Part shown: one piece after another, positions 5,368 through 32,298 of the stretch | Numbering within the stretch: position 1 is the stretch's first letter | Layout: each line of letters begins with the position of its first letter | DNA from: Macrostomum lignano | Lineage: Eukaryota | DNA: 64,000 bases | Direction of reading: 5' to 3' | Assembly (NCBI GenBank): GCA_002269645.1 | Contig: NIVC01003571.1 | Coordinates: 26,636 to 90,635 of the forward strand | The notes under the pieces: model-generated | Told to the model about the DNA's origin: nothing | What the model saw: the letters and a program-made list of their open reading frames with translations, nothing else | Databases searched by the model: none | Position numbers and translations under genes: made by a program

Positions 5368-5368
5368 G

Positions 5369-6233: not shown

Positions 6234-6409
6234 CACCTGTATAACTTTAGACACAAACACAAACTAGTGTCGGAAGATGTCTGAAAATGTGTTGGCAAAA
6301 GTTAACTGTTACACGACACTTTTTCCGATACTTTTTGCGACATTTTAAGTGTCATAAAAAAGTGTCGGAAGATCTGCCTGAAAATGTGTCGGCGAAAGTT
6401 ATACAGGTT
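6234..6409. mobile_element. Small MITE with TA flanks (Tc1/mariner-like)
   Basis: 14-bp perfect inverted repeat acctgtataacttt (6235-6248) / aaagttatacaggt (6395-6408). TA at 6232-6233 and 6410-6411. Confidence 0.6.
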
Positions 6410-8891
6410 TATCAAGAGTTAAAGTTTCCTTGTTCTTTTTTACGTTTTCTAACTTATTAGGCCTAAACAAACACAAACTAATATCATATACAATAAATGA
6501 GTTGTCCGTAAGTAGGTATGCGATTGATTTTAGCAGACACAGCTCCACCAATTTTCATGAAACTTGTTAGTTAAGGACTAGAAATAAGCGAACACTTTAC
6601 ACGTTCAACGTTATCTGAATCTGGAAAAAATCGAACTTAAAAAGCTCGTTTCTAAGAAAATCAAGAATTGAACTTTAAACGAGCTAGAAAATCAAATTAA
6701 AAACTTAAACTTGAACTGACTTTCCTCAAAATTAAATAGTTTTATTTATTTAAAAACGTAGATTACTTTAACTGCTTAACTTTTTCGATGTAGACTTGAA
6801 AATTTATCTATTAACTTAAGTAAAAAGTGAGATGATGAGAACAAGGACGATACTTAGATGAGAAATGATGAGTACATTGTACATAGTCATAGATAATTGT
6901 CAAATAAGTCATCAATTAAATGTAATGCAGATTGCAGACAGACCGAATAACTGAAAGTGAATTATACTATTGGACTCGTATAGGTCTAAAGGGTAGCTAG
7001 TTTTTTGTCCAACAATTGTCCACTTTTTTGCCATATATTATGTTTTTTGTGATTTTAATTTTGTGTTATGATTTTGCCTTGTAGGCCTAGGCCTATAAAT
7101 TTTTACTTAGGCCTATATTATACATTTTATACCCATGTGTGAATTGAGTACCAACAAATTAATTTACCTTTAGCTAGGCCTATGGAAATGGAAGTCATAG
7201 TGAATTTATGGCTAACAGACTAAAACTTCATTAGGTTAAGGGCAAGGCAATCTTTTTGTTTCTTGTTCAAAATTATTTTTACGCAAAATAAAAATTTCAT
7301 AGGCCTAGGGGCCTAGTTCTTGGTGCAGTCAAACTTAGTAGGCCTAAAGGCAGGCATGTTGCCACTGGGGGGGACATGTCCCCATTAGTAAAAGCTATAG
7401 GCCTAAGGGCCAATGCCCACCTTATCAATTATTGTGGTAGGCCCTAATTAATAATTTTTCTACCAGGTGCCAATATATAACACCTTTGGCACTAAAATAG
7501 GTGCCTGCGATGCTTAAAAGAATGTTTATAATGCCAAAATAAGTGCTTGAAAGTTGAAATATCAAAAAGAATATATAAAATACCACAATAACACCCGTGT
7601 TTGCTTAAAACTAACGAAAACAGCACGATTTAAGTTTTTTGTTTACAGTATGACAGCATGCTGGTTGCTGTCTCAGCTTGCTAGTTAATCGAAAAATGAT
7701 TGTTACAATATCAACAAAGCTAGTTAACTTTTTAGCGCCAATAAATGCATTCATGTTTTAGTAGCTTGTTGCAGGACTCTCTTTCTGCTGTGGGTTTCTT
7801 GTTAGTTAGTTTTAGACATGCATCATGACGGTAGGCCTAGGCCCTTGCAGCTTAAATTTAAATGCTTTCTACTCGCTGAAGGCACGTGCGTGCGTGCTGC
7901 TGGCCGGCAACTAGGAAACTAGGGTCTAAAATCCATGTAGTTCTAAAACTGAGCTGGGGTGAAGGCTGTGTGGCTAAGCCTACACATGACATGCCTAAAC
8001 TAGGCTTACTACTATAAGGCATTGAATTAGACCTAGGTTGTGCTGTACCTGTAGCTTAGTAGAGATTTTTTAATAAAATAATTGGTTCTAATTCTAAATT
8101 CTAATACTATGGTATTAAACGAACTAACAAGTCTGGTTTATTTAAGTCAAGTTAATTGTGTTGTTTAAAAGGTAATCTAGCCACTTGGTATAGGCCTACT
8201 CCTACTCCTAGGCCTAGGCCAGCCCCAGTGGGCCTAGCCAGGTAGAAGTTTAGTAGTAGGTAGGCGGTAGGCCTAGTAGTTGAGTGAGTTGAGTTGAGTA
8301 GAAAAAAGTAGGGCCTAAGCCTTTGCTTCCCATATAGTCATATGCAAAAAATATCAGTTTTTATTCTAGAGAGTAAGAGAGACTAAGAGTGAGTGCAATT
8401 CTAGGTTTAGACCTAATTAGAAAAAATAACCAGATATTGCTATAAAGTAGGCTATAATGCTAATGTTGTATTGGCCATTTAAAAAATATTTGACTTTGAA
8501 AAAGTTCTTGGCTATAAAGTAGTATATATTTCATTGCTATATTATAATATTAAATAGGCCGGCTTCCAGACAGTCCGGCGACACAGCCGTGTCCCACTCA
8601 TGAGGCCATTCTATCCTCGGAAAACATGGCCTTGCAGCCCAGCAATGAATGTAGTGGTGTAGCGCTGCATGTATTTCTAGCTTTATTTTACATTGTATTG
8701 AAAACATTTGTGCACATATGCACAAAAAAGTTCTTTCATTGAAACGGTTATACCCTTTTACATTTTACATATATATTGGCAATGCCAATGCCAATGGCTT
8801 AATTTAATTTAAGCAGTTCTATACACCTAAAAATATGGGCCCTAAAATTTATGCTTTTTCTTCAGTTAGTGTTATGGTATATAAAAGGCGC

Positions 8892-9271
8892 GGCAATCCT
8901 ACACTTCCGTTCGGTAAATTATTTTCACATTTGAATTCATACCCAAGAGTCCACACCAACACCGTGGAGGGCACATGGGCCCACGCGAAGCGCAAGATCC
9001 GCAACATGCATGGCACAAGCGACGCTCTCTTCGACGCACACATTGAGGAATTTCTCTGGCGTCGTCTGTATCCCCAATGTCCATTTGGGGCGATCCTGTA
9101 CTGGATTGGACATTACTATCCATTGTAGACACCTTAATGACCTGCAGACACACTCTAAGTGACTATGCGCTCTAACAGACTGCTACCATGTTCCACTGTT
9201 TCAGTTTTGTTTAGTTACATTGTTATTTAACACGCCTGTTCAAATGTCAAAATGTCAAATGTAGGATTGCC
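8892..9271 (+). mobile_element. Merlin (IS1595/ISXO2-like) deletion derivative, left arm only
   Basis: 12-bp TIR ggcaatcctaca/tgtaggattgcc, with TSD aaaggcgc/aaaggtgc. It encodes the C-terminal motif HTNTVEGTWAHAKRK..GTS....HIEEFLWRR. The empty site is present in the right arm near 29835. Confidence 0.85.
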
Positions 9272-10244
9272 AAAGGTGCATATATCCAAGACCTATCTAT
9301 ATAATATAATGGTATTTCTATATATAAATAGTAATGTTAATTGCTAAATAAAAAATAGAGCTTGACTAGTAAACCATTTGCTAGTATATGACTGAGTTAT
9401 TATTTTTTATTAACAGAGCCAGATTTGTCTATATTGTTGATATATTTCTAGCCAAAGCATTATAGTATTAGTTGCCTATATTAGCTATTAGCTATGCCTT
9501 GCCTAGATTAGATATAGTATAGGGCCTTAATTCTATCTAGCCTAGGATAGAACTCTATAGCTTTAAGGACTTAATTTTAATGTAGGCCTATTAAGTTTTT
9601 AATCCATTTTACACAAAATTGACTATTTGATTTGATATCAAACCTATTTAATTTAAGCCCTAGGCCTAGCCAAAATAAATCATTGCTAAATAGAATTGAA
9701 ATTTAAAATTAAATATACTAGGCCTAGCCTACCAAAATTTATATATACCAAGTTATATATAGTGCTAGGCCTAGGGCTAAAGAAAAGTTGAACCCTAATA
9801 ATACTATTAATTAGACTAATGAATTAGTGAGTAAACTTGAAGCCTGCCTACTATGCCTAATATAAATAATTAAGCATACAAGCAAATATTAGAGATTTAG
9901 TATATTTGGTTTGGATTAATATATTCTAATTAGGTCTATATTTGATTCAGAATAGCTAAGCCTACCTAAGCTTTAGCCTAGGCTAAAGATAAAAGCATGA
10001 ATTTAGCCTTTTTATTGGATTAAAATATGTTTAGTTAGCATGCTTGGGTTGGGTGTAAACCCTTTTTTCATCTTTCTATATCCTCTTTTCTTATTCTCTA
10101 TCTTCTATCCTTATACTCTTTTCTACCCTTTTTACCCTCCCCTTACCTTTTGATCCTATCCTCTTCAACCTATCTCTATCCTTTTCTACTAGGTTCTACC
10201 CTTGTTTATAGCTTTACATTTATTTGTGGCTTCATTCTCTTAGC

Positions 10245-11160
10245 CCTAGCCCTAGCCCCAGCTTAGCCCTAGCTTGAGATCAAGCCCCAGCTCAAGCTCT
10301 AGCCACACCACAGCCCTAGCAGCCAGCTCTAGCTTAAGCTCAAGCACTAGCCCAGTCCCAGCCCTATCCCACTCTATCCCAGCCCCTAATCTAGCCCTAA
10401 CCTTAGCCCTAGCCCTAGTTCCTCCCCTAGCCCTGGCCTTAGCCTTAGTGCTTGTTATCCCTGCCCCAGCTCTGGCCCTATCACTATCCTGCCCTAGCCC
10501 TAGCCCTTGCCCTAGCCCCAGCCCTAGCCCCAGCCCCAGCCCTAGCCCCAGCCTTTGCCCTTGCCCTAGCCTTAGCCCAAGCCCAAGCCCCAGCCTTAGC
10601 CCCAGCCCCAGCCTTTGCCCTAGCCTTAGCCCAAGCCCAAGCCCAAGCCCTAGCCCTAGCCCTTGCCCCTGCCCTAGCCCCTGCCCTAGCCCCTGCCCTA
10701 GCCCTAGCCCCAGCCCTTGCCCTAGCCTTAGCCCTAGCCCTAGCCTTAGCCCAAGCCCTAGCCCAAGCCCTAGCCCAAGCCCTAGCCTTAGCCTAAGCCC
10801 TTGCCCCTGCCCCTGCCCCTGCCCCTGCATTTGCCCTAGCCCCAGCCCCTGCCCTTGCCCTAGCCCTAGCCCCAGCCCCTGCCCTTGCCCTAGCCCTAGC
10901 CCCAGCCCCTGCCCTTGCCCTAGCCCTAGCCCCAGCCCTACCCCACCCAAGCCCTACCCCACCCCAGCGTCAGTCCTACCCCACCCCATCGCCAGCCCTA
11001 CCCCACCCTAGCGCCAGCCCTACCCCACTCCAGCCCCAGCCCTACCCTACCCCAGCCCTACCCCACCCCAGCCCTACCCCATCTCAGCGCCAGCCCTACC
11101 CCATCCCAGTCTTGGCCCTAGACCCCCAGAACTGGCCCTTTCACTATCCTAGCCCTAACC
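10245..11160. repeat. Degenerate hexamer array (CCCTAG/CCCCAG/CCTTAG/CCCTTG/CCCAAG), left arm
   Basis: Direct reading of the sequence. It produces the SP/LG/LA low-complexity ORFs. Confidence 0.9.
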
Positions 11161-11339
11161 CCAGCAGAATTCTACTTCTTTGACTCCTGCACCCCTGCAC
11201 TCCCTACACCCCGTGCACTCCACATGTGCTGTTTGTATTTTTATGAATGCTTTTTTGTTGCTTTAATCATTAATTCCTCCCAGGCAGTCCTTCTAGGCTA
11301 TCTTTCCTAGGCAGCCCCCAGGCAAACCTTTCAAGGCAG

Positions 11340-12600
11340 CTTTCCCAGGCAAACCCTCCCAGACAGCCCCCCTACCCTCCTCTACTCTTCTATCCTCTCC
11401 TTACTCTTCTCTACCCTTTATCCTCCTACTCTCCTCTACTATCCTACACACCTCTATCCTTCTCTACCCTCTACCCCTTCTCTACCCTCTTCTACCAGCT
11501 CCTCCCCTCCTCTGCAGCTATACCCTTGTCTATTGCCTTAACCTCCGTTACCAGCCTCACCCCCTACTCTCCTCTACCAGCTCCTACCCTTCTCTGCCCT
11601 TCTACCATTTCCTACCCTCCTACCTTCTACTCTCCCCTGCCCTGCTCTACCCTTCGACACTTTCCCTTCTCTCTTCTACCAGCTCCTACCCTCCTCTACC
11701 AACTCTTACCCTCCTAGCCTCCGCCATCAGCTCCTACCCTCCTATAACAGGAGGAATAACAGGATAATGAACCTAGATTAGATTCTATCTACTATACTAG
11801 GTTAGTAGCCTATCCTACCTACTAGGCTAGTAAATATAATACCTATCATTCTACCGTCTAGACTTATAGGTGCTAATCTACTTTATAGTCTGTTAGGCTT
11901 CGCGGGTCAACCTGCTAGTCTTCTAGGTACAAATCCACTCTATCTACCTGACTAGTAGTTGCTAAACAACTCTGTACCCTACAAGGCTAGTAGTCCTAAT
12001 ATACCTATCTACGAGCTCGTACTAGGCAAGTTGTGCTAAACTGCCCTACCTTATATGCTAATAGTTGCTCAAATATTCCTTTTAGAAGCTTCTGAGTAGT
12101 TGAAGTCAGTTTGCTTAAGGTCTTTCACTCTCCCTTTTTCTCTTTGCTATTCTCCCCTAGCCTTGATATTCTTCTCCTTACCCATCCTTGCTATTCTCTT
12201 ACCTTCCTTCTATTCCTGTTTTTTTCTTTTATATTCCCTGCTGAACTTCCCCTCCTCCTCTATCCTTTTCATTCCCTTCCTCCTCTATCCTTGTTGCTAT
12301 TTCCCTTCTCCATTCTCCTTGTCCCCCATTCTCCTTGCTATTCCTCTTTGCTTTGCTCCTTTTTCTCCCCTTCAGACCCAGCCCTTTCCTCCCCTTCAGA
12401 CCTGACCCTCTCCTCCATTCAGTACCCACCCTCTCCTCCCCTTCAGATTCCACCCTCTCCTCCCCTTCAGATTCCACCCTCTCCTCCCCTACAGATCCCA
12501 CCCTCTCTTCCCCTTCAAACCCTCTTCTCCCCTTTAGACCCCAGCCTCTTCTCCCCTTCAGACCCCCCCCTTTTCTTCTTTCCAGCCTCACCTCGTAGCT
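11340..12600. repeat. Polypyrimidine/low-complexity tracts (mirrored at about 26230-27500)
   Basis: C/T-only stretches at 11375-11750 and 12125-12590, including a short 23-bp repeat ccaccctctcctccccttcagat. Confidence 0.75.
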
Positions 12601-12699
12601 CTGCTAATTAAACTTTAACTATTCTTTTCAGAAGAAGTGGAGAAGAATTTATCTCCTTCCTCTCTTCAGAATATCCTCGCATCGGTCTTGTGGTCATTC

Positions 12700-13560
12700 T
12701 ACGTGCCGTAGCGACTGGTCGCAGCAACCATAACTCTCTACCGCCGCCGTAATGGCACCTGACGTACTGTCCAACCTGTTCAACACGACCTCAGGGTGCT
12801 GCAGAGCGACACACTTGCGGCCTACCTTTTCGTTTTGGTGCTCGATGGGGTGCTACGGAGGGCCCTGCCAACAGATGAGGACGGCTTCCTACTGTGGCTG
12901 CAAACAAACAGCCGCCATCTGGAGTCGGCGTAACCCAGGAGCTGTTTGCCTCTACGGCTGAGGGAGCCCAGCGCATGCTAGACAGCCTGGTGGCAGCTGC
13001 GGCATCGGTCGGGCTAGCGGTGAACATCGAGAAGAGGCAGGTGATGTGTACCTGCGGAGCTGCCTATCAAAATCACCTGCTGGGATGCCCGACGATCGTG
13101 CATTGGCTCTACCTCGCTGCACGCGCTTCACGTACCTCGGCAGTCTTGTGCCCAGTGTCCAGGAGGACTTGGCGCGACGCAGGGGCCTGGCCTGGGTTGC
13201 CTTCCGCTCTATCCGAGTTGTCCTGTAGGACGCCGCGCTGCCAGACTGCTGCGACGACCTAGCGAGACCCTCCGCAGGCAAAGACTTCAACTGGCGGGCC
13301 ACACCATTCGGCGGAGGCTTACTGTTCTCAACCAGTGCAGGACGTCCTGCTACTCACGATGCAGGGCCCCTGGCCCCGAGGCTACGGCCGGGCGAGCCGC
13401 TACGCGGATTGCTTGCTAGATGACGCTGGGGTGATCGGCTAGGAATTCTGTTGCCGCCTTCAGAGAGCTCACACCGAGAAAACTGATCTGACACCACCTC
13501 CATTGTGAACTGTACTCTGTTGAGTCCCCGGCGGTTTGCCTTGTTGTTGTCTCTTCAGAA
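12700..13560 (+). pseudogene. Degenerate non-LTR retrotransposon RT fragment (further copies at 17006-17810 + and 25280-26140 -)
   Basis: Frameshifted RT motifs: FNTTSGVLQ.DTLA.YLF, AQRMLDSLVAAAASVGLAVNIEK, FTYLGSLVPSVQEDLARRRGLAWVAF. Confidence 0.75.
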
Positions 13561-14586
13561 TAATTTGCCCAGCTGCGAACTGTGATGGTGCATATCGCGT
13601 ACTCGCGATTCAAAAGTTTATGCTTCTTACTGTTTCACTGATCTAATTCCAAACCTACCACGCAAACTATTTACTTTTAATTCCGTGTGCTTTTCTTGTG
13701 TTTTACTTTTTACCGTTTGGTGTCAATGCTATTTATTGCGTGTAATATTGTCGCAAAATTCAACTTCGGATGTCAATATTTAGCTACTGCCGCTGTTCTG
13801 CATTACAAATACTTCCGCATGTACTGACGTAACATTGCGCCAATAATTTTACATTGCGTGGCGTCGAAACCAATCTGCTGTTGAATGCTACTAGCGTAGC
13901 TAATGGCCGTTTGAATCTCTTGAAATACACTAAAATGTCATGCTGTAGTATTGCTGTTGAAGATCTAAACGAGACTAGCCATACTCCCTACTGATCCATA
14001 TGCTTCTCAAGCAAGGTATACGGAAAGCAGAATGAGCAGCAAACTTAGTATTTGATCTTTGGATCCCTTATAGAACCAAGGGAAGGGATCTAGTCTAGAT
14101 GTAACATTTAAATAAAAATTCTTGATATAATGGAATTCAATTAATTCCTAACCGTAGTAATTTTTTAACTTCCACTTTCCCCGAGTTTGACCACTTTCTC
14201 TGCTACAGGCTTAAGCTAAACCAACGCAAAATACGAGCCTGAATAAAAAACAACTCACTCCACAACCTTAAGCTTAATATTTCTTTCTGCCACTGCTGTG
14301 TCTTGCAATACTCATAAATCCTGTGACTTCGCTTCACAGATGTTGCTTGAGAAACATATGCCGTCCCATTTGAATTGGCGCAAGTCTCTTTTACATCGTC
14401 AAAAGCAATATGTCTGGTGCCAATTATATTTGTGCCGATCAAACTTCCTAGAGAATGATTTGTTGATAACTACATGTCCCTGTCTTGAAGCTTGCACGCT
14501 GTCTTTAACCATTATTTTGTCGGTGTACAACGTGGAACCGATCAGACAAGTTGGTCGTAAATTCCCTAAAATCCTGGATAGGGGCT

Positions 14587-15766
14587 GAGCTGTTGGGGAA
14601 GAGCTAGGCGGCAAGCAGCGGAGCTGTTGGGGGAGCCGCGGTAGGCAGCGGAGCTGTTGGGGGAGAGGCGGTAGGCAGCGGAGCTGTTGGGGGAGCCGCG
14701 GTAGGCAGCGGAGCTGTTGGGGGAGCCGCGGTAGGCAGCGGAGCTGTTGGGGGAGAGGCGGTAGGCAGCGGAGCTGTTGGGGGAGAGGCGGTAGGCAGCG
14801 GAGCTGTTGGGGGAGAGGCGGTAGACAGCGGAAATGTTGGGGGAGCCGCGGTAGGCAGCGGAGCTGCTGGGGGAGAGGCGGCAAGCAGCGGAGCTGTTGG
14901 GGGAGCCGCGGTAGGCAGCGAAGCTGTTGGGGGAGAGGCGATAGACAGCGGAAATGTTGGGGGAGCCGCGGTAGGCAGCGGAGCTGCTGGGGGAGAGGCG
15001 GCAAGCAGCGGAGCTGTTGGGGGAGCCGCGGTAGGCAGCGGAGCTGTTGGGGGAGCCGCGGTAGGCAGCGGAGCTGTTGGGGGAGAGGCGGTAGGCAGCG
15101 GAGCTGTTGGGGGAGCCGCGGTAGGCAGCGGAGCTGTTGGGGGAGAGGCGGTAGGCAGCGGAGCTGTTGGGGGAGAGGCGGTAGACAGCGGAAATGTTGG
15201 GGGAGCCGCGGTAGGCAGCGGAGCTGTTGGGGGAGCCGCGGTAGGCAGCGGAGCTGCTGGGGGAGAGGCGGCAAGCAGCGGAGCTGTTAGGGGAGCCGCG
15301 GTAGGCAGCGGAGCTGTTGGGGGAGCCGCGGTAGGCAGCGGAGCTGTTGGGGGAGAGGCGGTAGACAGCGGAAATGTTGGAGGAGCCGCGGTAGGCAGCG
15401 GAGCTGCTGGGGGAGAGGCGGCAAGCAGCGGAGCTGTTGGGGAGCCGCGGTAGGCAGCGGAGCTGTTGGGGGAGCCGCGGTAGGCAGCGGAGCTGTTGGG
15501 GAGAGGCGGTAGGCAGCGGAGCTGTTGGGGAGCCGCGGTAGGCAGCGGAGCTGCTGGGGGAGAGGCGGTAGACAGCGGAAATGTTGGGGAGCCGCGGTAG
15601 GCAGCGGAGCTGCTGGGGGAGAGGCGGCAAGCAGCGGAGCTGTTGGGGAGCCGCGGTAGGCAGCGGAGCTGTTGGGGGAGAGGCGGTAAGCAGCGGAGCT
15701 GTTGGGGGAGCCGCGGTAAGCAGCGGAGCTGTTGGGGGAGCCGCGGTAGGCAGCGGAGCTGTTGGG
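14587..15766. repeat. 30-bp GC-rich minisatellite, left arm (about 39 units)
   Basis: Unit gtaggcagcggagctgttgggggag(agg/ccg)cg with a few discrete variants. Confidence 0.95.
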
Positions 15767-16007
15767 TGAAGGAGGAGGTGGCATACATGTAAGTACATGT
15801 AGGTTTCTATGCGATCATATTCCACAGAAGTCGCCTTCAAAATTGGATACATGTTCGGCGTTCGAAAAATGAATCCCTCTCAGTGTGCATCCCTCCCTGG
15901 TGGTACCAAAGAATACCATTTTGTCAATCAAGTTTAGGATTGCCCATTAACCTACAGATAGTAGAAAGCGAAGACAATGAGGAAAGTGAAGCCTTTTGAC
16001 GGGTCGC

Positions 16008-16178
16008 TTTCATAAGACCGAAATTTTCCAACGCCGAAAACTACTGCACGATGCTTTCAGAAGACCGAAGCTTCATAAGACCGACCGAGACACAACGCCG
16101 AAAACTGACCAAGGTCAAAGGGCCCTGCATTTTGAGTTTTTGGCGTTGTGAAATTTCGGTCTTATGAAATCCCCCCTT
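16008..16178. mobile_element. Small MITE-like inverted repeat
   Basis: tttcataagaccgaaattttccaacgccgaaaact pairs imperfectly with agtttttggcgttgtgaaatttcggtcttatgaaa. Confidence 0.55.
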
Positions 16179-16999
16179 TTACGAAGCCGATGAGTTCGTG
16201 CCGTAGTGTACTAACTAATATCCGAGTTTAAGTGTATTATTCTATAATTTAATTCGCTGCCTGTCAGCCATGATGGATCTATACAGGGAGCGGAGATTAA
16301 TTTACATGTATGTACTCTTATATTACATGTATATAAACATAACAATTCATATCTTACTTCCTTGGCTCTTTCTTTACCAGTGGAATGGCCGTCTATGGCC
16401 AAAAGTCATTAAATTGTTGCCTGAGAATTCAAAACGAGACCGATTGTAGAGCCACTCATTCATTTTTTTCTTGAAGCTGAAGTTTTTGATGAATAACGCT
16501 GAGAATACGCTCGAAATCACGTGCGACATCACCCTTGGGCAGTCCAGCCCGATGAAGTGTCGTTGCTACAGATTGTCCAGCAGTCAAAAGTTGACATTCA
16601 TGTCAAGGTTGATATCCACTTCTTCCATGTTGAAAATTGAATACTGAAGCAATCCACTCGCTCAGCAAATTCAGCCTACCCCTTCATTTTGCTCCTATAA
16701 AATACGCTAGCTACTGTAGTATTGTGTTGCCTGTTTTATTCAGTTTATGTCAGAAAGGGCTCTCTCCGCCTACCCTTTAACTCGTAATATCTGTGGAGTA
16801 AGTATATTTATCATTTATTGAGAATGATGCAACTTACGGCATGCGCGAAGCTCATTGGCACTTGGGGGTTGCACAGGACAACGCACCGCCACACCGAGCC
16901 GATGCTGTTAGTCAACCGAAAGAACAGCTACAGCTGCGCACTCTGCGCTGGTCCCGGTCCCCAGACATGAACCCCATCGAGTAATGTCTGGGACTTCCT

Positions 17000-20621: not shown

Positions 20622-21239
20622 TAGTTTTGGCAAACTTGGTTACAAAAAGGTACGGCTCGTACAGTAAACATGTATTACCATCTGGCATCTGGGTGACGGT
20701 TTTAAATGTTGCTAGGGCTGTGACCTGGGTGCTCTACTCCACTCTAACTTGATGCCTGTAAGGCTTAGTTTCCGATCATTTACTTCATTTACTAATTTAA
20801 GCTGTCGCGAGAGAGAGAGAGAGAGAGAGGGGGCTCTGCAGTCCCAGTCCCTACCCCCCATTTAACGCCTTAGCCCTAGGTTTTCAAAAATTGATTGCCG
20901 CAATTTGACTGCAGTCAATTTGTCTGGGGAATAAATGAACTCTAAACATTTGGTACTTAACATTCGAGCCGCGGCACTTGATCGTTTCGAACCAAAATAA
21001 TGTTGCTGGAGAATACATGTACATATAGTACTGCATATAGCTAAAGTAACAAATATGACCCTCAATAAAATAATATATAAAATCATGCTTCTGTAACTTC
21101 TGAATGTACATGTAGCAAGGCTTTGGGGCATAAACGATTATAGGCCGTACCGAAAAAATAAGAATTTTCCAATATTCTGCTTAGAACTATCTATTTCTGC
21201 CGCCACATACAACTCTCAAAGCTCCGGCCTACCCGCCTC

Positions 21240-24200
21240 CCGCAACAGCTCCGCTGCCTACCGCGGCTCCCCCAACAGCTCCGCTGCCTACCGCGGCTCC
21301 CCCAACAGCTCCGCTGCTTGCCGCCTCTCCCCCAGCAGCTCCGCTGCCTACCGCGGCTCCCCCAACAGCTCCGCTGCCTACCGCGGCTCCCCCAACATTT
21401 CCGCTGCTTGCCGCCTCTCCCCCAGCAGCTCCGCTGCCTACCGCGGCTCCCCCAACAGCTCCGCTGCCTACCGCCTCTCCCCCAACAGCTCCGCTGCCTA
21501 CCGCGGCTCCCCCAACAGCTCCGCTGCTTGCCGCCTCTCCCCCAGCAGCTCCGCTGCCTACCGCGGCTCCCCCAACAGCTCCGCTGCCTACCGCGGCTCC
21601 CCCAACATTTCCGCTGTCTACCGCCTCTCCCCCAGCAGCTCCGCTGCCTACCGCGGCTCCCCCAACAGCTCCGCTGCCTACCGCCTCTCCCCCAACAGCT
21701 CCGCTGCCTACCGCGGCTCCCCCAACAGCTCCGCTGCCTACCGCGGCTCCCCAACAGCTCCGCTGCTTGCCGCCTCTCCCCCAGCAGCTCCGCTGCCTAC
21801 CGCGGCTCCTCCAACATTTCCGCTGTCTACCGCCTCTCCCCAACAGCTCCGCTGCCTACCGCGGCTCCCCCAACAGCTCCGCTGCCTACCGCGGCTCCCC
21901 TAACAGCTCCGCTGCTTGCCGCCTCTCCCCCAGCAGCTCCGCTGCCTACCGCGGCTCCCCCAACAGCTCCGCTGCCTACCGCGGCTCCCCCAACATTTCC
22001 GCTGTCTACCGCCTCTCCCCCAACAGCTCCGCTGCCTACCGCCTCTCCCCCAACAGCTCCGCTGCCTACCGCGGCTCCCCCAACAGCTCCGCTGCCTACC
22101 GCCTCTCCCCCAACAGCTCCGCTGCCTACCGCGGCTCCCCCAACAGCTCCGCTGCCTACCGCGGCTCCCCCAACAGCTCCGCTGCTTGCCGCCTCTCCCC
22201 CAGCAGCTCCGCTGCCTACCGCGGCTCCCCCAACATTTCCGCTGTCTACCGCCTCTCCCCCAACAGCTTCGCTGCCTACCGCGGCTCCCCAACAGCTCCG
22301 CTGCTTGCCGCCTCTCCCCAGCAGCTCCGCTGCCTACCGCGGCTCCCCCAACATTTCCGCTGTCTACCGCCTCTCCCCCAACAGCTCCGCTGCCTACCGC
22401 CTCTCCCCCAACAGCTCCGCTGCCTACCGCCTCTCCCCCAACAGCTCCGCTGCCTACCGCGGCTCCCCCAACAGCTCCGCTGCCTACCGCGGCTCCCCAA
22501 CAGCTCCGCTGCTTGCCGCCTCTCCCCCAGCAGCTCCGCTGCCTACCGCGGCTCCTCCAACATTTCCGCTGTCTACCGCCTCTCCCCCAACAGCTCCGCT
22601 GCCTACCGCGGCTCCCCCAACATTTCCGCTGTCTACCGCCTCTCCCCCAACAGCTCCGCTGCCTACCGCCTCTCCCCCAACAGCTCCGCTGCCTACCGCG
22701 GCTCCCCCAACAGCTCCGCTGCCTACCGCCTCTCCCCCAACAGCTCCGCTGCCTACCGCGGCTCCCCCAACAGCTCCGCTGCCTACCGCGGCTCCCCCAA
22801 CATTTCCGCTGTCTGCCGCCTCTCCCCCAACAGCTTCGCTGCCTACCGCGGCTCCCCCAACAGCTCCGCTGCTTGCCGCCTCTCCCCCAGCAGCTCCGCT
22901 GCCTACCGCGGCTCCCCCAACATTTCCGCTGTCTACCGCCTCTCCCCCAACAGCTCCGCTGCCTACCGCCTCTCCCCCAACAGCTCCGCTGCCTACCGCC
23001 TCTCCCCCAACAGCTCCGCTGCCTACCGCGGCTCCCCCAACAGCTCCGCTGCCTACCGCGGCTCCCCAACAGCTCCGCTGCTTGCCGCCTCTCCCCCAGC
23101 AGCTCCGCTGCCTACCGCGGCTCCCCCAACAGCTCCGCTGCCTACCGCGGCTCCCCCAACATTTCCGCTGTCTACCGCCTCTCCCCCAACAGCTCCGCTG
23201 CCTACCGCCTCTCCCCCAACAGCTCCGCTGCCTACCGCGGCTCCCCCAACATTTCCGCTGTCTACCGCCTCTCCCCCAACAGCTCCGCTGCCTACCGCCT
23301 CTCCCCAACAGCTCCGCTGCCTACCGCCTCTCCCCCAACAGCTCCGCTGCCTACCGCGGCTCCCCCAACAGCTCCGCTGCCTACCGCGGCTCCCCAACAG
23401 CTCCGCTGCTTGCCGCCTCTCCCCCAGCAGCTCCGCTGCCTACCGCGGCTCCTCCAACATTTCCGCTGTCTACCGCCTCTCCCCCAACAGCTCCGCTGCC
23501 TACCGCGGCTCCCCCAACAGCTCCGCTGCCTACCGCGGCTCCCCTAACAGCTCCGCTGCTTACCGCCTCTCCCCCAACAGCTCCGCTGCCTACCGCGGCT
23601 CCCCCAACAGCTCCGCTGCTTGCCGCCTCTCCCCCAGCAGCTCCGCTGCCTACCGCGGCTCCCCCAACATTTCCGCTGTCTACCGCCTCTCCCCCAGCAG
23701 CTCCGCTGCCTACCGCGGCTCCCCCAACAGCTCCGCTGCCTACCGCCTCTCCCCCAACAGCTCCGCTGCCTACCGCGGCTCCCCCAACAGCTCCGCTGCC
23801 TACCGCGGCTCCCCAACAGCTCCGCTGCTTGCCGCCTCTCCCCCAGCAGCTCCGCTGCCTACCGCGGCTCCTCCAACATTTCCGCTGTCTACCGCCTCTC
23901 CCCCAACAGCTCCGCTGCCTACCGCGGCTCCCCCAACAGCTCCGCTGCCTACCGCGGCTCCCCTAACAGCTCCGCTGCTTGCCGCCTCTCCCCAGCAGCT
24001 CCGCTGCCTACCGCGGCTCCCCCAACAGCTCCGCTGCCTACCGCGGCTCCCCCAACATTTCCGCTGTCTACCGCCTCTCCCCAACAGCTCCGCTGCCTAC
24101 CCCCCCCCAACAGCTCCGCTGCCTACCGCGGCTCCCCCAACAGCTCCGCTGCCTACCGCCTCTCCCCAACAGCTCCGCTGCCTACCGCGGCTCCCCCAAC

Positions 24201-24250
24201 AGCTCCGCTGCTTGCTCCGCTGCTTGCCGCCTAGCTCTTCCCCAACAGCT
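21240..24250. repeat. 30-bp minisatellite, right arm, inverted (about 100 units)
   Basis: Reverse complement of the left-arm unit. It is the source of the 882- and 890-aa repeat ORFs. Confidence 0.95.
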
Positions 24251-27200
24251 CAGCCCCTATCCAGGATTTTAGGGAATTTACGACCAACTTGTCTGATCGG
24301 TTCCACGTTGTACACCGACAAAATAATGGTTAAAGACAGCGTGCAAGCTTCAAGACAGGGACATGTAGTTATCAACAAATCATTCTCTAGGAAGTTTGAT
24401 CGGCACAAATATAATTGGCACCAGACATATTGCTTTTGACGATGTAAAAGAGACTTGCGCCAATTCAAATGGGACGGCATATGTTTCTCAAGCAACATCT
24501 GTGAAGCGAAGTCACAGGATTTATGAGTATTGCAAGACACAGCAGTGGCAGAAAGAAATATTAAGCTTAAGGTTGTGGAGTGAGTTGTTTTTTATTCAGG
24601 CTCGTATTTTGCGTTGGTTTAGCTTAAGCCTGTAGCAGAGAAAGTGGTCAAACTCGGGGAAAGTGGAAGTTAAAAAATTACTACGGTTAGGAATTAATTG
24701 AATTCCATTATATCAAGAATTTTTATTTAAATGTTACATCTAGACTAGATCCCTTCCCTTGGTTCTATAAGGGATCCAAAGATCAAATACTAAGTTTGCT
24801 GCTCATTCTGCTTTCCGTATACCTTGCTTGAGAAGCATATGGATCAGTAGGGAGTATGGCTAGTCTCGTCTAGATCTTCAACAGCAATACTACAGCATGA
24901 CATTTTAGTGTATTTCAAGAGATTCAAACGGCCATTAGCTACGCTAGTAGCATTCAACAGCAGATTGGTTTCGACGCCACGCAATGTAAAATTATTGGCG
25001 CAATGTTACGTCAGTACATGCGGAAGTATTTGTAATGCAGAACAGCGGCAGTAGCTAAATATTGACATCCGAAGTTGAATTTTGCGACAATATTACACGC
25101 AATAAATAGCATTGACACCAAACGGTAAAAAGTAAAACACAAGAAAAGCACACGGAATTAAAAGTAAATAGTTTGCGTGGTAGGTTTGGAATTAGATCAG
25201 TGAAACAGTAAGAAGCATAAACTTTTGAATCGCGAGTACGCGATATGCACCATCACAGTTCGCAGCTGGGCAAATTATTCTGAAGAGACAACAACAAGGC
25301 AAACCGCCGGGGACTCAACAGAGTACAGTTCACAATGGAGGTGGTGTCAGATCAGTTTTCTCGGTGTGAGCTCTCTGAAGGCGGCAACAGAATTCCTAGC
25401 CGATCACCCCAGCGTCATCTAGCAAGCAATCCGCGTAGCGGCTCGCCCGGCCGTAGCCTCGGGGCCAGGGGCCCTGCATCGTGAGTAGCAGGACGTCCTG
25501 CACTGGTTGAGAACAGTAAGCCTCCGCCGAATGGTGTGGCCCGCCAGTTGAAGTCTTTGCCTGCGGAGGGTCTCGCTAGGTCGTCGCAGCAGTCTGGCAG
25601 CGCGGCGTCCTACAGGACAACTCGGATAGAGCGGAAGGCAACCCAGGCCAGGCCCCTGCGTCGCGCCAAGTCCTCCTGGACACTGGGCACAAGACTGCCG
25701 AGGTACGTGAAGCGCGTGCAGCGAGGTAGAGCCAATGCACGATCGTCGGGCATCCCAGCAGGTGATTTTGATAGGCAGCTCCGCAGGTACACATCACCTG
25801 CCTCTTCTCGATGTTCACCGCTAGCCCGACCGATGCCGCAGCTGCCACCAGGCTGTCTAGCATGCGCTGGGCTCCCTCAGCCGTAGAGGCAAACAGCTCC
25901 TGGGTTACGCCGACTCCAGATGGCGGCTGTTTGTTTGCAGCCACAGTAGGAAGCCGTCCTCATCTGTTGGCAGGGCCCTCCGTAGCACCCCATCGAGCAC
26001 CAAAACGAAAAGGTAGGCCGCAAGTGTGTCGCTCTGCAGCACCCTGAGGTCGTGTTGAACAGGTTGGACAGTACGTCAGGTGCCATTACGGCGGCGGTAG
26101 AGAGTTATGGTTGCTGCGACCAGTCGCTACGGCACGTAGAATGACCACAAGACCGATGCGAGGATATTCTGAAGAGAGGAAGGAGATAAATTCTTCTCCA
26201 CTTCTTCTGAAAAGAATAGTTAAAGTTTAATTAGCAGAGCTACGAGGTGAGGCTGGAAAGAAGAAAAGGGGGGGGGGTCTGAAGGGGAGAAGAGGCTGGG
26301 GTCTAAAGGGGAGAAGAGGGTTTGAAGGGGAAGAGAGGGTGGGATCTGTAGGGGAGGAGAGGGTGGAATCTGAAGGGGAGGAGAGGGTGGAATCTGAAGG
26401 GGAGGAGAGGGTGGGTACTGAATGGAGGAGAGGGTCAGGTCTGAAGGGGAGGAAAGGGCTGGGTCTGAAGGGGAGAAAAAGGAGCAAAGCAAAGAGGAAT
26501 AGCAAGGAGAATGGGGGACAAGGAGAATGGAGAAGGGAAATAGCAACAAGGATAGAGGAGGAAGGGAATGAAAAGGATAGAGGAGGAGGGGAAGTTCAGC
26601 AGGGAATATAAAAGAAAAAAACAGGAATAGAAGGAAGGTAAGAGAATAGCAAGGATGGGTAAGGAGAAGAATATCAAGGCTAGGGGAGAATAGCAAAGAG
26701 AAAAAGGGAGAGTGAAAGACCTTAAGCAAACTGACTTCAACTACTCAGAAGCTTCTAAAAGGAATATTTGAGCAACTATTAGCATATAAGGTAGGGCAGT
26801 TTAGCACAACTTGCCTAGTACGAGCTCGTAGATAGGTATATTAGGACTACTAGCCTTGTAGGGTACAGAGTTGTTTAGCAACTACTAGTCAGGTAGATAG
26901 AGTGGATTTGTACCTAGAAGACTAGCAGGTTGACCCGCGAAGCCTAACAGACTATAAAGTAGATTAGCACCTATAAGTCTAGACGGTAGAATGATAGGTA
27001 TTATATTTACTAGCCTAGTAGGTAGGATAGGCTACTAACCTAGTATAGTAGATAGAATCTAATCTAGGTTCATTATCCTGTTATTCCTCCTGTTATAGGA
27101 GGGTAGGAGCTGATGGCGGAGGCTAGGAGGGTAAGAGTTGGTAGAGGAGGGTAGGAGCTGGTAGAAGAGAGAAGGGAAAGTGTCGAAGGGTAGAGCAGGG

Positions 27201-27679
27201 CAGGGGAGAGTAGAAGGTAGGAGGGTAGGAAATGGTAGAAGGGCAGAGAAGGGTAGGAGCTGGTAGAGGAGAGTAGGGGGTGAGGCTGGTAACGGAGGTT
27301 AAGGCAATAGACAAGGGTATAGCTGCAGAGGAGGGGAGGAGCTGGTAGAAGAGGGTAGAGAAGGGGTAGAGGGTAGAGAAGGATAGAGGTGTGTAGGATA
27401 GTAGAGGAGAGTAGGAGGATAAAGGGTAGAGAAGAGTAAGGAGAGGATAGAAGAGTAGAGGAGGGTAGGGGGGCTGTCTGGGAGGGTTTGCCTGGGAAAG
27501 CTGCCTTGAAAGGTTTGCCTGGGGGCTGCCTAGGAAAGATAGCCTAGAAGGACTGCCTGGGAGGAATTAATGATTAAAGCAACAAAAAAGCATTCATAAA
27601 AATACAAACAGCACATGTGGAGTGCACGGGGTGTAGGGAGTGCAGGGGTGCAGGAGTCAAAGAAGTAGAATTCTGCTGG

Positions 27680-28605
27680 GGTTAGGGCTAGGATAGTGAA
27701 AGGGCCAGTTCTGGGGGTCTAGGGCCAAGACTGGGATGGGGTAGGGCTGGCGCTGAGATGGGGTAGGGCTGGGGTGGGGTAGGGCTGGGGTAGGGTAGGG
27801 CTGGGGCTGGAGTGGGGTAGGGCTGGCGCTAGGGTGGGGTAGGGCTGGCGATGGGGTGGGGTAGGACTGACGCTGGGGTGGGGTAGGGCTTGGGTGGGGT
27901 AGGGCTGGGGCTAGGGCTAGGGCAAGGGCAGGGGCTGGGGCTAGGGCTAGGGCAAGGGCAGGGGCTGGGGCTAGGGCTAGGGCAAGGGCAGGGGCTGGGG
28001 CTGGGGCTAGGGCAAATGCAGGGGCAGGGGCAGGGGCAGGGGCAAGGGCTTAGGCTAAGGCTAGGGCTTGGGCTAGGGCTTGGGCTAGGGCTTGGGCTTG
28101 GGCTAAGGCTAGGGCTAGGGCTAAGGCTAGGGCAAGGGCTGGGGCTAGGGCTAGGGCAGGGGCTAGGGCAGGGGCTAGGGCAGGGGCAAGGGCTAGGGCT
28201 AGGGCTTGGGCTTGGGCTAAGGCTAGGGCAAAGGCTGGGGCTGGGGCTAAGGCTGGGGCTTGGGCTTGGGCTAAGGCTAGGGCAAGGGCAAAGGCTGGGG
28301 CTAGGGCTGGGGCTGGGGCTAGGGCTGGGGCTAGGGCAAGGGCTAGGGCTAGGGCAGGATAGTGATAGGGCCAGAGCTGGGGCAGGGATAACAAGCACTA
28401 AGGCTAAGGCCAGGGCTAGGGGAGGAACTAGGGCTAGGGCTAAGGTTAGGGCTAGATTAGGGGCTGGGATAGAGTGGGATAGGGCTGGGACTGGGCTAGT
28501 GCTTGAGCTTAAGCTAGAGCTGGCTGCTAGGGCTGTGGTGTGGCTAGAGCTTGAGCTGGGGCTTGATCTCAAGCTAGGGCTAAGCTGGGGCTAGGGCTAG
28601 GGCTA
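27680..28605. repeat. Degenerate hexamer array (CTAGGG/CTGGGG/CTAAGG), right arm
   Basis: Mirror image of 10245-11160 with small unit-number differences. Confidence 0.9.
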
Positions 28606-29409
28606 AGAGAATGAAGCCACAAATAAATGTAAAGCTATAAACAAGGGTAGAACCTAGTAGAAAAGGATAGAGATAGGTTGAAGAGGATAGGATCAAAAGG
28701 TAAGGGGAGGGTAAAAAGGGTAGAAAAGAGTATAAGGATAGAAGATAGAGAATAAGAAAAGAGGATATAGAAAGATGAAAAAAGGGTTTACACCCAACCC
28801 AAGCATGCTAACTAAACATATTTTAATCCAATAAAAAGGCTAAATTCATGCTTTTATCTTTAGCCTAGGCTAAAGCTTAGGTAGGCTTAGCTATTTTGAA
28901 TCAAATATAGACCTAATTAGAATATATTAATCCAAACCAAATATACTAAATCTCTAATATTTGCTTGTATGCTTAATTATTTATATTAGGCATAGTAGGC
29001 AGGCTTCAAGTTTACTCACTAATTCATTAGTCTAATTAATAGTATTATTAGGGTTCAACTTTTCTTTAGCCCTAGGCCTAGCACTATATATAACTTGGTA
29101 TATATAAATTTTGGTAGGCTAGGCCTAGTATATTTAATTTTAAATTTCAATTCTATTTAGCAATGATTTATTTTGGCTAGGCCTAGGGCTTAAATTAAAT
29201 AGGTTTGATATCAAATCAAATAGTCAATTTTGTGTAAAATGGATTAAAAACTTAATAGGCCTACATTAAAATTAAGTCCTTAAAGCTATAGAGTTCTATC
29301 CTAGGCTAGATAGAATTAAGGCCCTATACTATATCTAGGCAAGGCATAGCTAATAGCTAATATAGGCAACTAATACTATAATGCTTTGGCTAGAAATATA
29401 TCAACAATA

Positions 29410-29674
29410 CCCTATTGCAGCGCATGGCTTAAGTACGCCAGACGCCTACACAACCTGCGCCACGCTGTGAAATGACTTACCTGTGAAAGAAACCCTAAAG
29501 TTTTGGGTAAACGGCAGGAGTAACTATGACTGTCTTATCAAGCCTAAATGCCTCGGCATCTAATTAGTACCGCGCCGCGCCGTACTAATCGCCGCGCGCC
29601 GTACACGCCGCGCCGCGCCGTATTAGATCCGCGCCAGACACCGTCCGCCAAAATGCCCATGCGCTGCAATCAGG
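29410..29674. mobile_element. MITE of the same family as 366-639, right arm only
   Basis: TIRs ccctattgcagcgcatgg / ccatgcgctgcaatcagg. The 8-bp TSD caacaata sits at 29402-29409 and 29675-29682. The empty site is present in the left arm near 9432. Confidence 0.9.
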
Positions 29675-31289
29675 CAACAATATAGACAAATCTGGCTCTG
29701 TTAATAAAAAATAATAACCCAGTCATATACTAGCAAATGGTTTACTAGTCAAGCTCTATTTTTTATTTAGCAATTAACATTACTATTTATATATAGAAAT
29801 ACCATTATATTATATAGATAGGTCTTGGATATATGCGCCTTTTATATACCATAACACTAACTGAAGAAAAAGCATAAATTTTAGGGCCCATATTTTTAGG
29901 TGTATAGAACTGCTTAAATTAAATTAAGCCATTGGCATTGGCATTGCCAATATATATGTAAAATGTAAAAGGGTATAACCGTTTCAATGAAAGAACTTTT
30001 TTGTGCATATGTGCACAAATGTTTTCAATACAATGTAAAATAAAGCTAGAAATACATGCAGCGCTACACCACTACATTCATTGCTGGGCTACAAGGCCAT
30101 GTTTTCCGAGGATAGAATGGCCTCATGAGTGGGACACGGCTGTGTCGCCGGACTGTCTGGAAGCCGGCCTATTTAATATTATAATATAGCAATGAAATAT
30201 ACACTACTTTATAGCCAAGAACTTTTTCAAAGTCAAATATTTTTTAAATGGCCAATACAATATTAGCATTATAGCCAACTTTATAGCAATATCTGGTTAT
30301 TTTTTCTAATTAGGTCTAAACCTAGAATTGCACTCACTCTTAGTCTCTCTTACTCTCTAGAATAAAAACTGATATTTTTTGCATATGACTATATGGGAAG
30401 CAAAGGCTTAGGCCCTACTTTTTTCTACTCAACTCAACTCACTCAACTACTAGGCCTACCGCCTACCTACTACTAAACTTCTACCTGGCTAGGCCCACTG
30501 GGGCTGGCCTAGGCCTAGGAGTAGGAGTAGGCCTATACCAAGTGGCTAGATTACCTTTTAAACAACACAATTAACTTGACTTAAATAAACCAGACTTGTT
30601 AGTTCGTTTAATACCATAGTATTAGAATTTAGAATTAGAACCAATTATTTTATTAAAAAATCTCTACTAAGCTACAGGTACAGCACAACCTAGGTCTAAT
30701 TCAATGCCTTATAGTAGTAAGCCTAGTTTAGGCATGTCATGTGTAGGCTTAGCCACACAGCCTTCACCCCAGCTCAGTTTTAGAACTACATGGATTTTAG
30801 ACCCTAGTTTCCTAGTTGCCGGCCAGCAGCACGCACGCACGTGCCTTCAGCGAGTAGAAAGCATTTAAATTTAAGCTGCAAGGGCCTAGGCCTACCGTCA
30901 TGATGCATGTCTAAAACTAACTAACAAGAAACCCACAGCAGAAAGAGAGTCCTGCAACAAGCTACTAAAACATGAATGCATTTATTGGCGCTAAAAAGTT
31001 AACTAGCTTTGTTGATATTGTAACAATCATTTTTCGATTAACCAGCAAGCTGAGACAGCAACCAGCATGCTGTCATACCGTAAACAAAAAACTTAAATCG
31101 TGCTGTTTTCGTTAGTTTTAAGCAAACACGGGTGACAATAAATGCTTGCAATACCAAAATAAGTGCTAGTCCTATAATAATACAATTCTCAAAATAATAG
31201 AAATGTAGGAATTCAGTCATATATGTGTAGGCTACATGTTCAATTCTAGGCTTTGTCACCTCCAATTATAAAATCCATGGTCATAGAAA

Positions 31290-32146: not shown

Positions 32147-32298
32147 AAGTACATTCTAGCCTATAGGCCTACTTAAGCTATAAGCTATGCAACTTTCACT
32201 TTACTATACAAGAGCTCATTACCATCGTCTATCACATACATGCGCAACTGCTGGCCGACCTGGCCGATCTGGCCAACGTAAATTGTGGTGGACCAGGG

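What the first reader, a model, noticed from the sequence alone, without database searches (positions are those of the whole stretch)
7592..31134. 23.5-kb foldback element with about 7-kb inverted arms, CAC...GTG ends and a 7-bp border duplication
Seen: 7592 to about 15765 mirrors about 21240-31134. The inversion stops exactly at cacccgtg/cacgggtg, and acaataa directly flanks both ends. Known: 7-8-bp TSDs and CA...TG ends typify the P superfamily, and Drosophila Galileo is a P-superfamily foldback element with long TIRs and 7-bp TSDs. Inference: this is a giant non-autonomous P/Galileo-like element. Its TIRs have swallowed LINE debris, hexamer arrays and a minisatellite, and it moved as a single unit. 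No P/THAP transposase is visible inside.
Basis: partly seen in the sequence, partly recalled or inferred. Interest (0 to 1): 0.85.

Follow-up and report, generated by a model that had tools for sequence, protein, structure and literature searches.

The report
Giant foldback transposon-like insertion
A 23.5-kb stretch with two nearly identical 7-kb mirror-image arms and a 7-base duplication at its borders is most likely a non-coding "foldback" DNA transposon insertion that kept growing in place; it is a large example of a known kind, and its family cannot be proven from this window.

Summary
The inverted arms 7592-14624 and 24214-31134 differ by 9 substitutions in about 6,645 aligned bases. They continue into inverted 30-bp minisatellites. 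The inversion ends exactly at CACCCGTG/CACGGGTG, and ACAATAA flanks both ends (chance about 1-3 in 10,000). The flanks are unique and unrelated.

Mis-assembly is unlikely. Each arm carries its own MITE insertion with its own 8-bp duplication, and the spacer is asymmetric.

A staggered-cut, transposase-type insertion best explains the borders.

The element encodes no transposase of its own. It holds only reverse-transcriptase debris, a Merlin-type MITE and Tc1-type relics.

The P/Galileo assignment rests only on the 7-bp duplication length and the CA..TG ends. No THAP or P-type gene is in the window, the duplication does not match Galileo's target consensus, and no other copy could be found because the source genome is absent from every searchable collection.

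"Moved as one 23.5-kb unit" is doubtful. Eight of the nine substitutions and both private MITEs lie in the outer, AT-rich 2.4 kb. The inner 4.7 kb is almost identical between arms, and part of it has also been copied into the spacer. This points to recent in-place extension or homogenisation.

This is a large member of a known structural kind, of moderate interest.

The parts
7585..7591 (.). Left copy of the 7-bp flanking direct repeat ACAATAA (putative target-site duplication)
   Evidence: Read directly. Chance match 1.4e-4 to 3e-4.
7592..14624 (+). Left arm, non-array part; the terminus is CACCCGTGTTTGC...
   Evidence: 9 mismatches against the right arm in about 6,645 aligned nt. The terminal 25-mer is unique to the two ends.
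7592..10240 (+). Outer, AT-rich zone of the left arm (35% GC, rich in TAGGCCTA). It holds 8 of the 9 arm mismatches and the private MITE. Its mirror is about 28606-31134.
8892..9271 (+). 380-bp Merlin/IS1595-type MITE present only in the left arm. Its TIR is GGCAATCCTACA and its 8-bp TSD is AAAGGCGC (8884-8891) / AAAGGTGC (9272-9279).
   Evidence: Pfam DDE_Tnp_IS1595 E=1.5e-4.
10241..11109 (+). Degenerate hexamer array (TAGCCC)n plus a 38-bp array in the left arm. The mirror is at 27731-28605.
12752..14227 (+). Segment C with reverse-transcriptase debris. It is mirrored at 24611-26086 and has a third, direct copy at 17006-18481.
   Evidence: 99.9% and 100% identity; RT homology.
14608..15766 (+). 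30-bp minisatellite, left array (38.8 copies)
15784..21216 (.). Asymmetric 5.4-kb spacer. It consists of Tc1-type relics plus a secondary copy of arm sequence.
17006..19103 (+). 2.1-kb secondary copy of arm sequence (C', a 14-copy minisatellite, and 178 bp identical to 15784-15961). It is inserted in a Tc1 DDE_3 relic and flanked by a perfect 38-bp direct repeat, 16962-16999 / 19113-19150.
20024..20621 (+). Tc1/mariner-type deletion derivative with 114-bp perfect TIRs and TA on both sides. It retains the HTH part of its transposase.
21220..24211 (-). 30-bp minisatellite, right array (100.4 copies), in inverted orientation
24214..31134 (-). Right arm, non-array part; it ends ...GCAAACACGGGTG
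29410..29674 (.). 265-bp MITE present only in the right arm, with 8-bp TSD CAACAATA (29402-29409 / 29675-29682). Another copy lies at 366-639 with TSD GTCTGCGT.
31135..31141 (.). Right copy of the 7-bp flanking direct repeat ACAATAA
   Evidence: Read directly.

Best explanation
This is a non-autonomous, foldback-type DNA element that entered this site by a transposase-style integration.

Mechanism (inferred):
- A 7-bp staggered cut at ACAATAA was filled in after the two identical inverted ends (CACCCGTG...) were joined, leaving the 7-bp duplication.
- The enzyme must have come in trans, because nothing inside encodes a matching transposase.

The present 23.5-kb size and 7-8-kb arms are a layered product:
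- The outer, AT-rich 2.3-2.6 kb of inverted repeat is older. It shows about 0.4% divergence and one private MITE insertion per arm.
- The inner, GC-rich 4.4-4.7 kb (hexamer arrays, RT debris) plus the minisatellite was copied or homogenised between arms much more recently. The likely route is intramolecular recombination or repair synthesis using the other arm as template.
- The same kind of process also pasted a 2.1-kb arm fragment into the spacer.
- The minisatellites then changed length independently.

The superfamily is unresolved. P/Galileo-like is the leading guess, on duplication length alone.

Shown: the anatomy, the 7-bp repeat, the private insertions and the divergence gradient.
Inferred: transposition itself, the trans-acting enzyme, and the order of events.
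For: - Sharp inverted-repeat ends and a 7/7 flanking direct repeat; chance 1.4e-4 to 3e-4.
- The flanks are unique and unrelated to each other and to the element.
- The terminal sequence is not present internally, so this is not two nested complete copies.
- The other inverted-repeat structures examined at this locus are bona fide transposons with proper duplications. The Merlin-type MITE has an 8-bp duplication, the 265-bp MITE has 8 bp at two loci, and the Tc1 derivative has TA. Cut-and-paste transposons have therefore been active in this genome.
- Layering: 8 of 9 mismatches lie in the outer 1,971 aligned nt against 1 in the inner 4,674 nt. Fisher p=3.9e-4; p=0.0014 after allowing for any split point. 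Both private MITEs are in the outer zone.
- The third copy, C', is 100% identical to the right arm. It is flanked by a 38-bp duplication inside a Tc1 DDE_3 relic.
- Published precedent for TIR growth by tandem repeats, nested TEs and recruitment of internal sequence: Galileo (PMC3573991, PMC4168063).
Against: - Only one copy is seen. No second locus with these ends and no empty site could be found, because the source genome is not in any searchable collection.
- No subterminal repeat arrays that would suggest transposase-binding sites occur in the first 1.3 kb.
- The outer arms share 35% GC and a 30-fold TAGGCCTA enrichment with both flanks. This is unexpected for DNA that arrived from elsewhere, unless such DNA is common in this genome or consists of related TE debris.
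- The divergence gradient could also arise from gene conversion that favours the inner arm after a whole-unit insertion.
Confidence: 0.65

Rival explanations
1. One reading: a giant Galileo-like member of the P superfamily whose 7-kb TIRs already contained the RT debris, arrays and minisatellite, and which transposed as one 23.5-kb unit.
For: - A 7-bp duplication and CA..TG ends.
- Long, internally repetitive TIRs.
- A non-autonomous two-TIR structure, like the longest Galileo copies (PMC4168063: 9,021 bp with TIRs of 4,246 and 4,680 bp and identical TSDs).
- Overall arm identity of 99.86%.
Against: - No THAP or P-type transposase appears anywhere in the window.
- The duplication ACAATAA fits GTANTAC at only 3 of 6 positions.
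- CA..TG ends are not specific to this superfamily.
- The divergence gradient and the recent internal copying suggest the inner arms are younger than the outer arms.
- Transposition efficiency falls with element length (stated in PMC3688188).
- The host is not a drosophilid. The best TE protein matches are 48-54% to the flatworm Macrostomum lignano.
Confidence: 0.15
2. There was no transposition. This is a one-off in-place inverted duplication (replication template switch or fold-back repair) of local DNA, later kept similar by arm-to-arm gene conversion. The 7-bp repeat is then chance or a repair scar.
For: - The outer arms have the same GC content and the same TAGGCCTA enrichment as the adjacent flanks.
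- The inner end of the inverted repeat lies inside a minisatellite that could mediate template switching.
- The locus shows other repair-type copying: the 38-bp-flanked block, and a 2-bp microhomology at the internal deletion joint.
- Only a single copy is seen.
Against: - A template switch at the arm end would give microhomology, not a direct repeat. Continuing the inverted copy would give TTATTGT, not ACAATAA.
- The 7/7 match has a chance of about 2e-4.
- There is no sequence homology between the outer arms and the flanks, even at low stringency.
- Both junctions are sharp and lead into unique flanks.
Confidence: 0.12
3. Assembly artefact: a fold-back chimeric read, or two haplotypes joined head to head.
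For: The differences between the arms (SNPs, MITE presence or absence, array length) are of the kind seen between alleles.
Against: - A false inverted join would make the right flank the reverse complement of the left flank, and it is not.
- A 5.4-kb asymmetric spacer with its own TE relics separates the arms.
- Two independent mis-joins that happen to produce a 7-bp direct repeat would be needed.
Confidence: 0.04

Closest known systems
Galileo (P superfamily, Drosophila), especially the long two-TIR non-autonomous copies of D. willistoni
   Same: - A 7-bp target-site duplication.
- Very long TIRs that grow by tandem repeats, nested TEs and recruitment of internal sequence.
- The longest copies lack a transposase.
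- AT-rich target sites.
(PMC4168063, PMC3573991)
   Different: - The arms are 7.0 kb of unique sequence (8.2 kb with the array) against a maximum of 4.7 kb. Total length is 23.5 kb against 9.0 kb.
- The host is not a drosophilid.
- The duplication does not fit GTANTAC.
- No THAP or P-type gene and no family could be shown.
- The outer 1.3 kb has no tandem repeats that could carry repeated binding sites.
Drosophila Foldback (FB) and Mutator/Foldback families such as Tm1 and Tetris
   Same: Foldback architecture, variable and very long inverted arms, and mostly non-coding copies.
   Different: - These families make 8-10-bp (mostly 9-bp) duplications (PMC3169594), whereas this one makes 7 bp.
- Their arms are built of short tandem repeats starting near the ends, whereas here the outer 2.6 kb is unique sequence.
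- The MULE element 1.35 kb upstream (2856-6239) has unrelated termini.
Large genomic palindromes kept alike by arm-to-arm gene conversion (for example, sex-chromosome palindromes)
   Same: Kilobase-scale arms with >99.8% identity, a unique spacer, and evidence of recent homogenisation.
   Different: Those palindromes are not bounded by a short direct duplication and sharp CA..TG inverted ends.

Membership tests
P superfamily / Galileo | A 7- or 8-bp target-site duplication | tested here: met
   ACAATAA is present on both sides. It is exactly 7 bp and cannot be extended.
P superfamily / Galileo | The element encodes, or shares its termini with an element that encodes, a THAP-domain plus P-type transposase | not testable with these tools
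   No THAP or Tnp_P hit appeared in any ORF tested in the window. The spacer has no room for such a gene.
P superfamily / Galileo | Target preference GTANTAC within a 15-bp palindromic, AT-rich motif | tested here: inconclusive
   ACAATAA matches 3 of 6 defined positions. The reconstructed 15-mer TACCACAATAAATGC is not palindromic, but the site is AT-rich. A single site cannot define a preference (consensus from PMC4168063).
P superfamily / Galileo | The conserved terminal segment of about 40 bp shared among Galileo subfamilies | not tested
   The reference terminal sequences appear only in figures that are not held. PMC3688188 states that such a segment exists.
P superfamily / Galileo | A multi-copy family with different duplications at different loci | not testable with these tools
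   The termini occur only at the two ends in the window. There were 0 hits in the metagenome and viral collections.
Mutator / Foldback (MULE) | An 8-10-bp (typically 9-bp) target-site duplication | tested here: not met
   The duplication is 7 bp only. The Tm1 range is taken from PMC3169594.
Mutator / Foldback (MULE) | Arms composed of short tandem repeats starting close to the termini | tested here: not met
   There are no tandem or subterminal repeat arrays in 7592-9000. The first array starts 2.65 kb from the end.
hAT | An 8-bp duplication and YARNG termini | tested here: not met
   The duplication is 7 bp and the terminus is CACCC. The family features come from general knowledge.
Tc1/mariner | A TA duplication | tested here: not met
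   The flanks read ..ATAA|CACC and GGTG|ACAA. The Tc1-type relics in the spacer are separate nested elements.
Non-TE genomic palindrome / inverted segmental duplication | No target-site duplication; one arm is contiguous with ancestral flanking DNA | tested here: inconclusive
   A 7-bp direct repeat is present (against this reading). The outer arms share composition and the TAGGCCTA word with the flanks (for it), but show no alignable homology.

The most novel reading that the evidence does not exclude
This could be one copy of an active family of giant (>20 kb) foldback cut-and-paste transposons with TIRs of 7 kb or more, in a non-insect (possibly flatworm-related) genome. They would be mobilised as whole units by a P-like transposase, or by a not-yet-described transposase that makes 7-bp duplications. 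These would be the longest TIRs known for a cut-and-paste element.
Probability: 0.1. Interest if true: 0.65.

Novelty: new member of a known kind. Interest (0 to 1): 0.35.

Why it matters
If confirmed as a transposon, this would be an unusually large foldback element. Its arms are about 1.5-1.7 times longer than those of the longest published Galileo copy, and it sits outside insects.

The two-layer arm structure gives a concrete snapshot of how very long TIRs grow in place, through inward copying or homogenisation, array expansion and nested insertions.

Such long near-perfect inverted repeats are also potential sources of hairpin RNA, of spacer inversion by arm-to-arm recombination, and of chromosome breakage. 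They matter for genome stability and for assembly quality.

As it stands this is a single copy without a family, so the value is descriptive.

Tried and rejected
- Exact-match scans with the terminal 22-mer and a subterminal 23-mer in metagenome contigs, and with the terminal 20-mer in viral contigs: 0 hits.
- An exact-protein look-up of a 418-aa window ORF, to locate the source assembly: not on record.
- Homologue searches to identify the organism. The LINE ORF gave at best 48% identity to Macrostomum lignano. A PH+RhoGAP query gave nothing. The source genome and its close relatives are therefore not in the protein collection, so I spent no further look-ups on junction-spanning contigs.
- tblastn of the window's own LINE proteins and the M. 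lignano RT protein against the element: no hits. The arm's RT debris belongs to a different retroelement.
- Rfam and tRNA scans, to test for a Dada-like RNA-gene target or a SINE: nothing.
- Low-stringency BLAST of the outer arms against the rest of the window, to test for a local origin: no meaningful homology.
- Two nested or head-to-head complete copies ('double-Ds' type): rejected, because no internal copy of the terminus exists.
- A link to the adjacent MULE element: rejected, because its termini and subterminal repeats are different.
- Telomere-like nature of the hexamer array: rejected. The unit is GGGCTN and there are only 2 TTAGGG.
Full report
**Observation**

The reported structure is present as described.
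- The repeat finder and a self-BLAST show inverted matches 7592-8891 with 31134-29835, and 9432-15766 with 29409-23065.
- A MAFFT alignment of 7592-14624 against the reverse complement of 24214-31134 has 9 mismatches in about 6,645 aligned bases. It also has a 388-bp gap (sequence only in the left arm), a 273-bp gap (sequence only in the right arm), and five 2-6-bp indels inside tandem arrays.
- The inversion stops exactly at 7592 (CACCCGTG) and 31134 (CACGGGTG). ACAATAA lies immediately outside both ends. No other register gives an 8-bp repeat.
- The probability of a 7/7 match at these fixed positions is 1.4e-4 from local composition, 3e-4 for this particular word, and 1.9e-4 empirically between the two flanks.
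- The terminal 25-mer occurs nowhere else in the window.
- The 2-kb flanks are unrelated to each other (best match 27 bp at 85%) and to the element.

**Anatomy of an arm, from the outside in**
- An AT-rich unique zone of about 2.65 kb (35% GC).
- A degenerate hexamer array, (TAGCCC)n of about 144 units, plus a 38-bp array (10241-11109).
- A 24/67-bp array (12365-12571).
- A 1,476-bp segment C (12752-14227) carrying reverse-transcriptase debris. Pfam RVT_1 alone is weak (E=0.2). The ORF 12879-13259 is 54% identical (E=1.8e-28) to Macrostomum lignano A0A1I8GDW3, and weaker hits align to the RVT_1 end of other proteins.
- A 356-bp stretch, then a 30-bp minisatellite: 38.8 copies on the left, 100.4 copies on the right.

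**The spacer**

The 5.4-kb spacer (15784-21216) is asymmetric.
- It contains a Tc1-type transposase relic. A stitched peptide hits DDE_3 at E=1.2e-6.
- It contains a Tc1-type deletion derivative at 20024-20621, with 114-bp perfect TIRs, TA on both sides and a retained HTH.
- It contains a 2.1-kb secondary copy of arm sequence (17006-19103). This consists of C', a 14-copy minisatellite, and 178 bp identical to the left inner edge.
- That copy interrupts the Tc1 relic and is flanked by a perfect 38-bp direct repeat.
- No ORF tested in one arm, the spacer or the rest of the window hits a THAP or P-type transposase. Once the Tc1 relics are subtracted, the spacer has no room for such a gene.

**Not an artefact**

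Each arm has a private transposon insertion with its own duplication.
- The left arm has a 380-bp Merlin/IS1595-type MITE at 8892-9271, with TSD AAAGGCGC/AAAGGTGC (Pfam DDE_Tnp_IS1595 E=1.5e-4).
- The right arm has a 265-bp MITE at 29410-29674, with TSD CAACAATA. A second copy of this family sits at 366-639 with TSD GTCTGCGT.

A false head-to-head join would make the right flank the reverse complement of the left flank, and it is not.

**Transposition or in-place duplication**

A template-switch or fold-back duplication predicts microhomology at the new joint, not a direct repeat. Continuing the inverted copy would give TTATTGT rather than ACAATAA.

Sharp inverted ends with a 7-bp direct duplication and unique flanks are the signature of a staggered-cut integration. 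This locus demonstrably hosts several cut-and-paste families with clean duplications. I therefore favour a transposase-type insertion, with confidence about 0.65 for the layered version.

One observation sits uneasily with that. The palindromic octamer TAGGCCTA occurs 31 times in the window (about 1 expected). All but one occurrence lies in 2780-9766 or 29073-32164, that is, in both flanks and the outer 2.2 kb of both arms. The contexts differ and no alignable homology exists. This shows only that the outer arms and the flanks are the same kind of DNA. I leave it unexplained.

**Did 23.5 kb move as one unit?**

The arm differences are not spread evenly.
- Eight of nine mismatches (at 7647, 7683, 8449, 8465, 8524, 8635, 9395 and 9950) lie in the outer 1,971 aligned bases. 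One (13968) lies in the inner 4,674 bases.
- Fisher p=3.9e-4; p=0.0014 after allowing for any split point.
- Both private MITEs are also in the outer zone.
- The inner zone includes a 2,062-bp stretch that is 100% identical between the arms.
- C' in the spacer is 100% identical to the right arm and differs at one site from the left.
- The minisatellites are reorganised rather than simply mirrored.

The simplest reading is a layered history. An older inverted repeat of about 2.3-2.6 kb is flanked by the duplication. The inner GC-rich part was then recently copied or homogenised between the arms by intramolecular recombination or repair synthesis. The same kind of process produced the 38-bp-flanked block in the spacer. 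Preferential gene conversion of the inner arm after a whole-unit insertion cannot be excluded.

**Comparison with known families**

Galileo (P superfamily) is the closest.
- It makes 7-bp duplications.
- Its long TIRs expand by tandem repeats, nested TEs and recruitment of internal sequence.
- Its longest D. willistoni copy is 9,021 bp with TIRs of 4,246 and 4,680 bp, no transposase and identical TSDs (PMC4168063).

Membership is not shown here.
- The only defining feature met is the duplication length.
- The duplication does not fit GTANTAC.
- There is no THAP or P-type gene, and no family data.
- The outer 1.3 kb lacks repeats that could hold multiple binding sites (compare PMC3688188).

Mutator/Foldback families make 8-10-bp, mostly 9-bp, duplications (PMC3169594). 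The neighbouring MULE element (about 2856-6239) has unrelated termini. hAT (8 bp) and Tc1/mariner (TA) also fail.

**Limits**

The source genome could not be reached.
- The terminal and subterminal probes found nothing in the metagenome and viral collections.
- An exact-protein look-up failed.
- The best protein matches are 48-54% to Macrostomum lignano transposon proteins. This hints at, but does not establish, a flatworm-related host.
- The key tests therefore remain undone: other copies, an empty site, an autonomous partner, and spanning reads.

**Verdict**

This is a real, well-bounded, very large foldback-type insertion. It is most probably a non-autonomous DNA transposon whose arms were extended or homogenised in place. 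It is a large new member of a known structural kind. The P/Galileo label is a reasonable but untested guess. Interest is 0.35.

Noticed in passing
window 2856-6239: A MULE-type DNA transposon lies 1.35 kb left of the foldback. Its ORFs carry PHD+FLYWCH (3598-4392) and a MULE DDE domain (4636-5367). It has inverted blocks of 15-bp subterminal repeats (2856-3185 / 5637-6239). No clean target-site duplication was found at the apparent ends.
   Followed up: partly
window 2780-9766 and 29073-32164: The palindromic octamer TAGGCCTA occurs 31 times in the window (about 1 expected). It is almost entirely confined to the flanks and the outer 2.2 kb of both arms, in varied contexts with no shared repeat family. 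Its meaning is unknown.
   Followed up: partly
window 366-639, 29410-29674, 32338-32438: A 265-bp MITE family (TIR CCYKATTGCAGCGCATGG) makes 8-bp duplications. There are two complete copies with different TSDs, plus fragments.
   Followed up: yes
window 16962-19150: A 2.1-kb copy of arm sequence is inserted into a Tc1-type DDE_3 relic. It is flanked by a perfect 38-bp direct repeat and a few filler bases. The internal 356-bp deletion joint has a 2-bp microhomology. This looks like repair-synthesis template switching rather than transposition.
   Followed up: partly
window 38215-43863 (-), with 36039-36601 and 43942-44519: A LINE-like element has PHD, endonuclease (Exo_endo_phos), RT and RNase H ORFs, and is broken into several frames. 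It is bracketed by 96%-identical direct repeats of about 570 bp.
   Followed up: no
window 45118-56185 (+): A series of long ORFs on the same strand includes PH (53045-53827) and RhoGAP (55466-56185) domains. They are interleaved with tandem arrays (periods of 39, 33, 16 and 21 bp). This is probably a host gene with repeat-rich exons or introns. No homologue was found by the word-indexed search.
   Followed up: partly
window 10241-11109 and 27731-28605: The degenerate G-rich hexamer array (GGGCTN)n has its G-rich strand pointing towards the outer end in both arms. It may be G-quadruplex-prone (my inference; not computed). It is not telomeric: there are only 2 TTAGGG.
   Followed up: yes
whole window: CpG observed/expected is 0.73 and GpC is 1.35. 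Eight of the nine arm differences are transitions; the one I checked by eye (7647) lies at a CpG. This is consistent with cytosine methylation in this genome.
   Followed up: no
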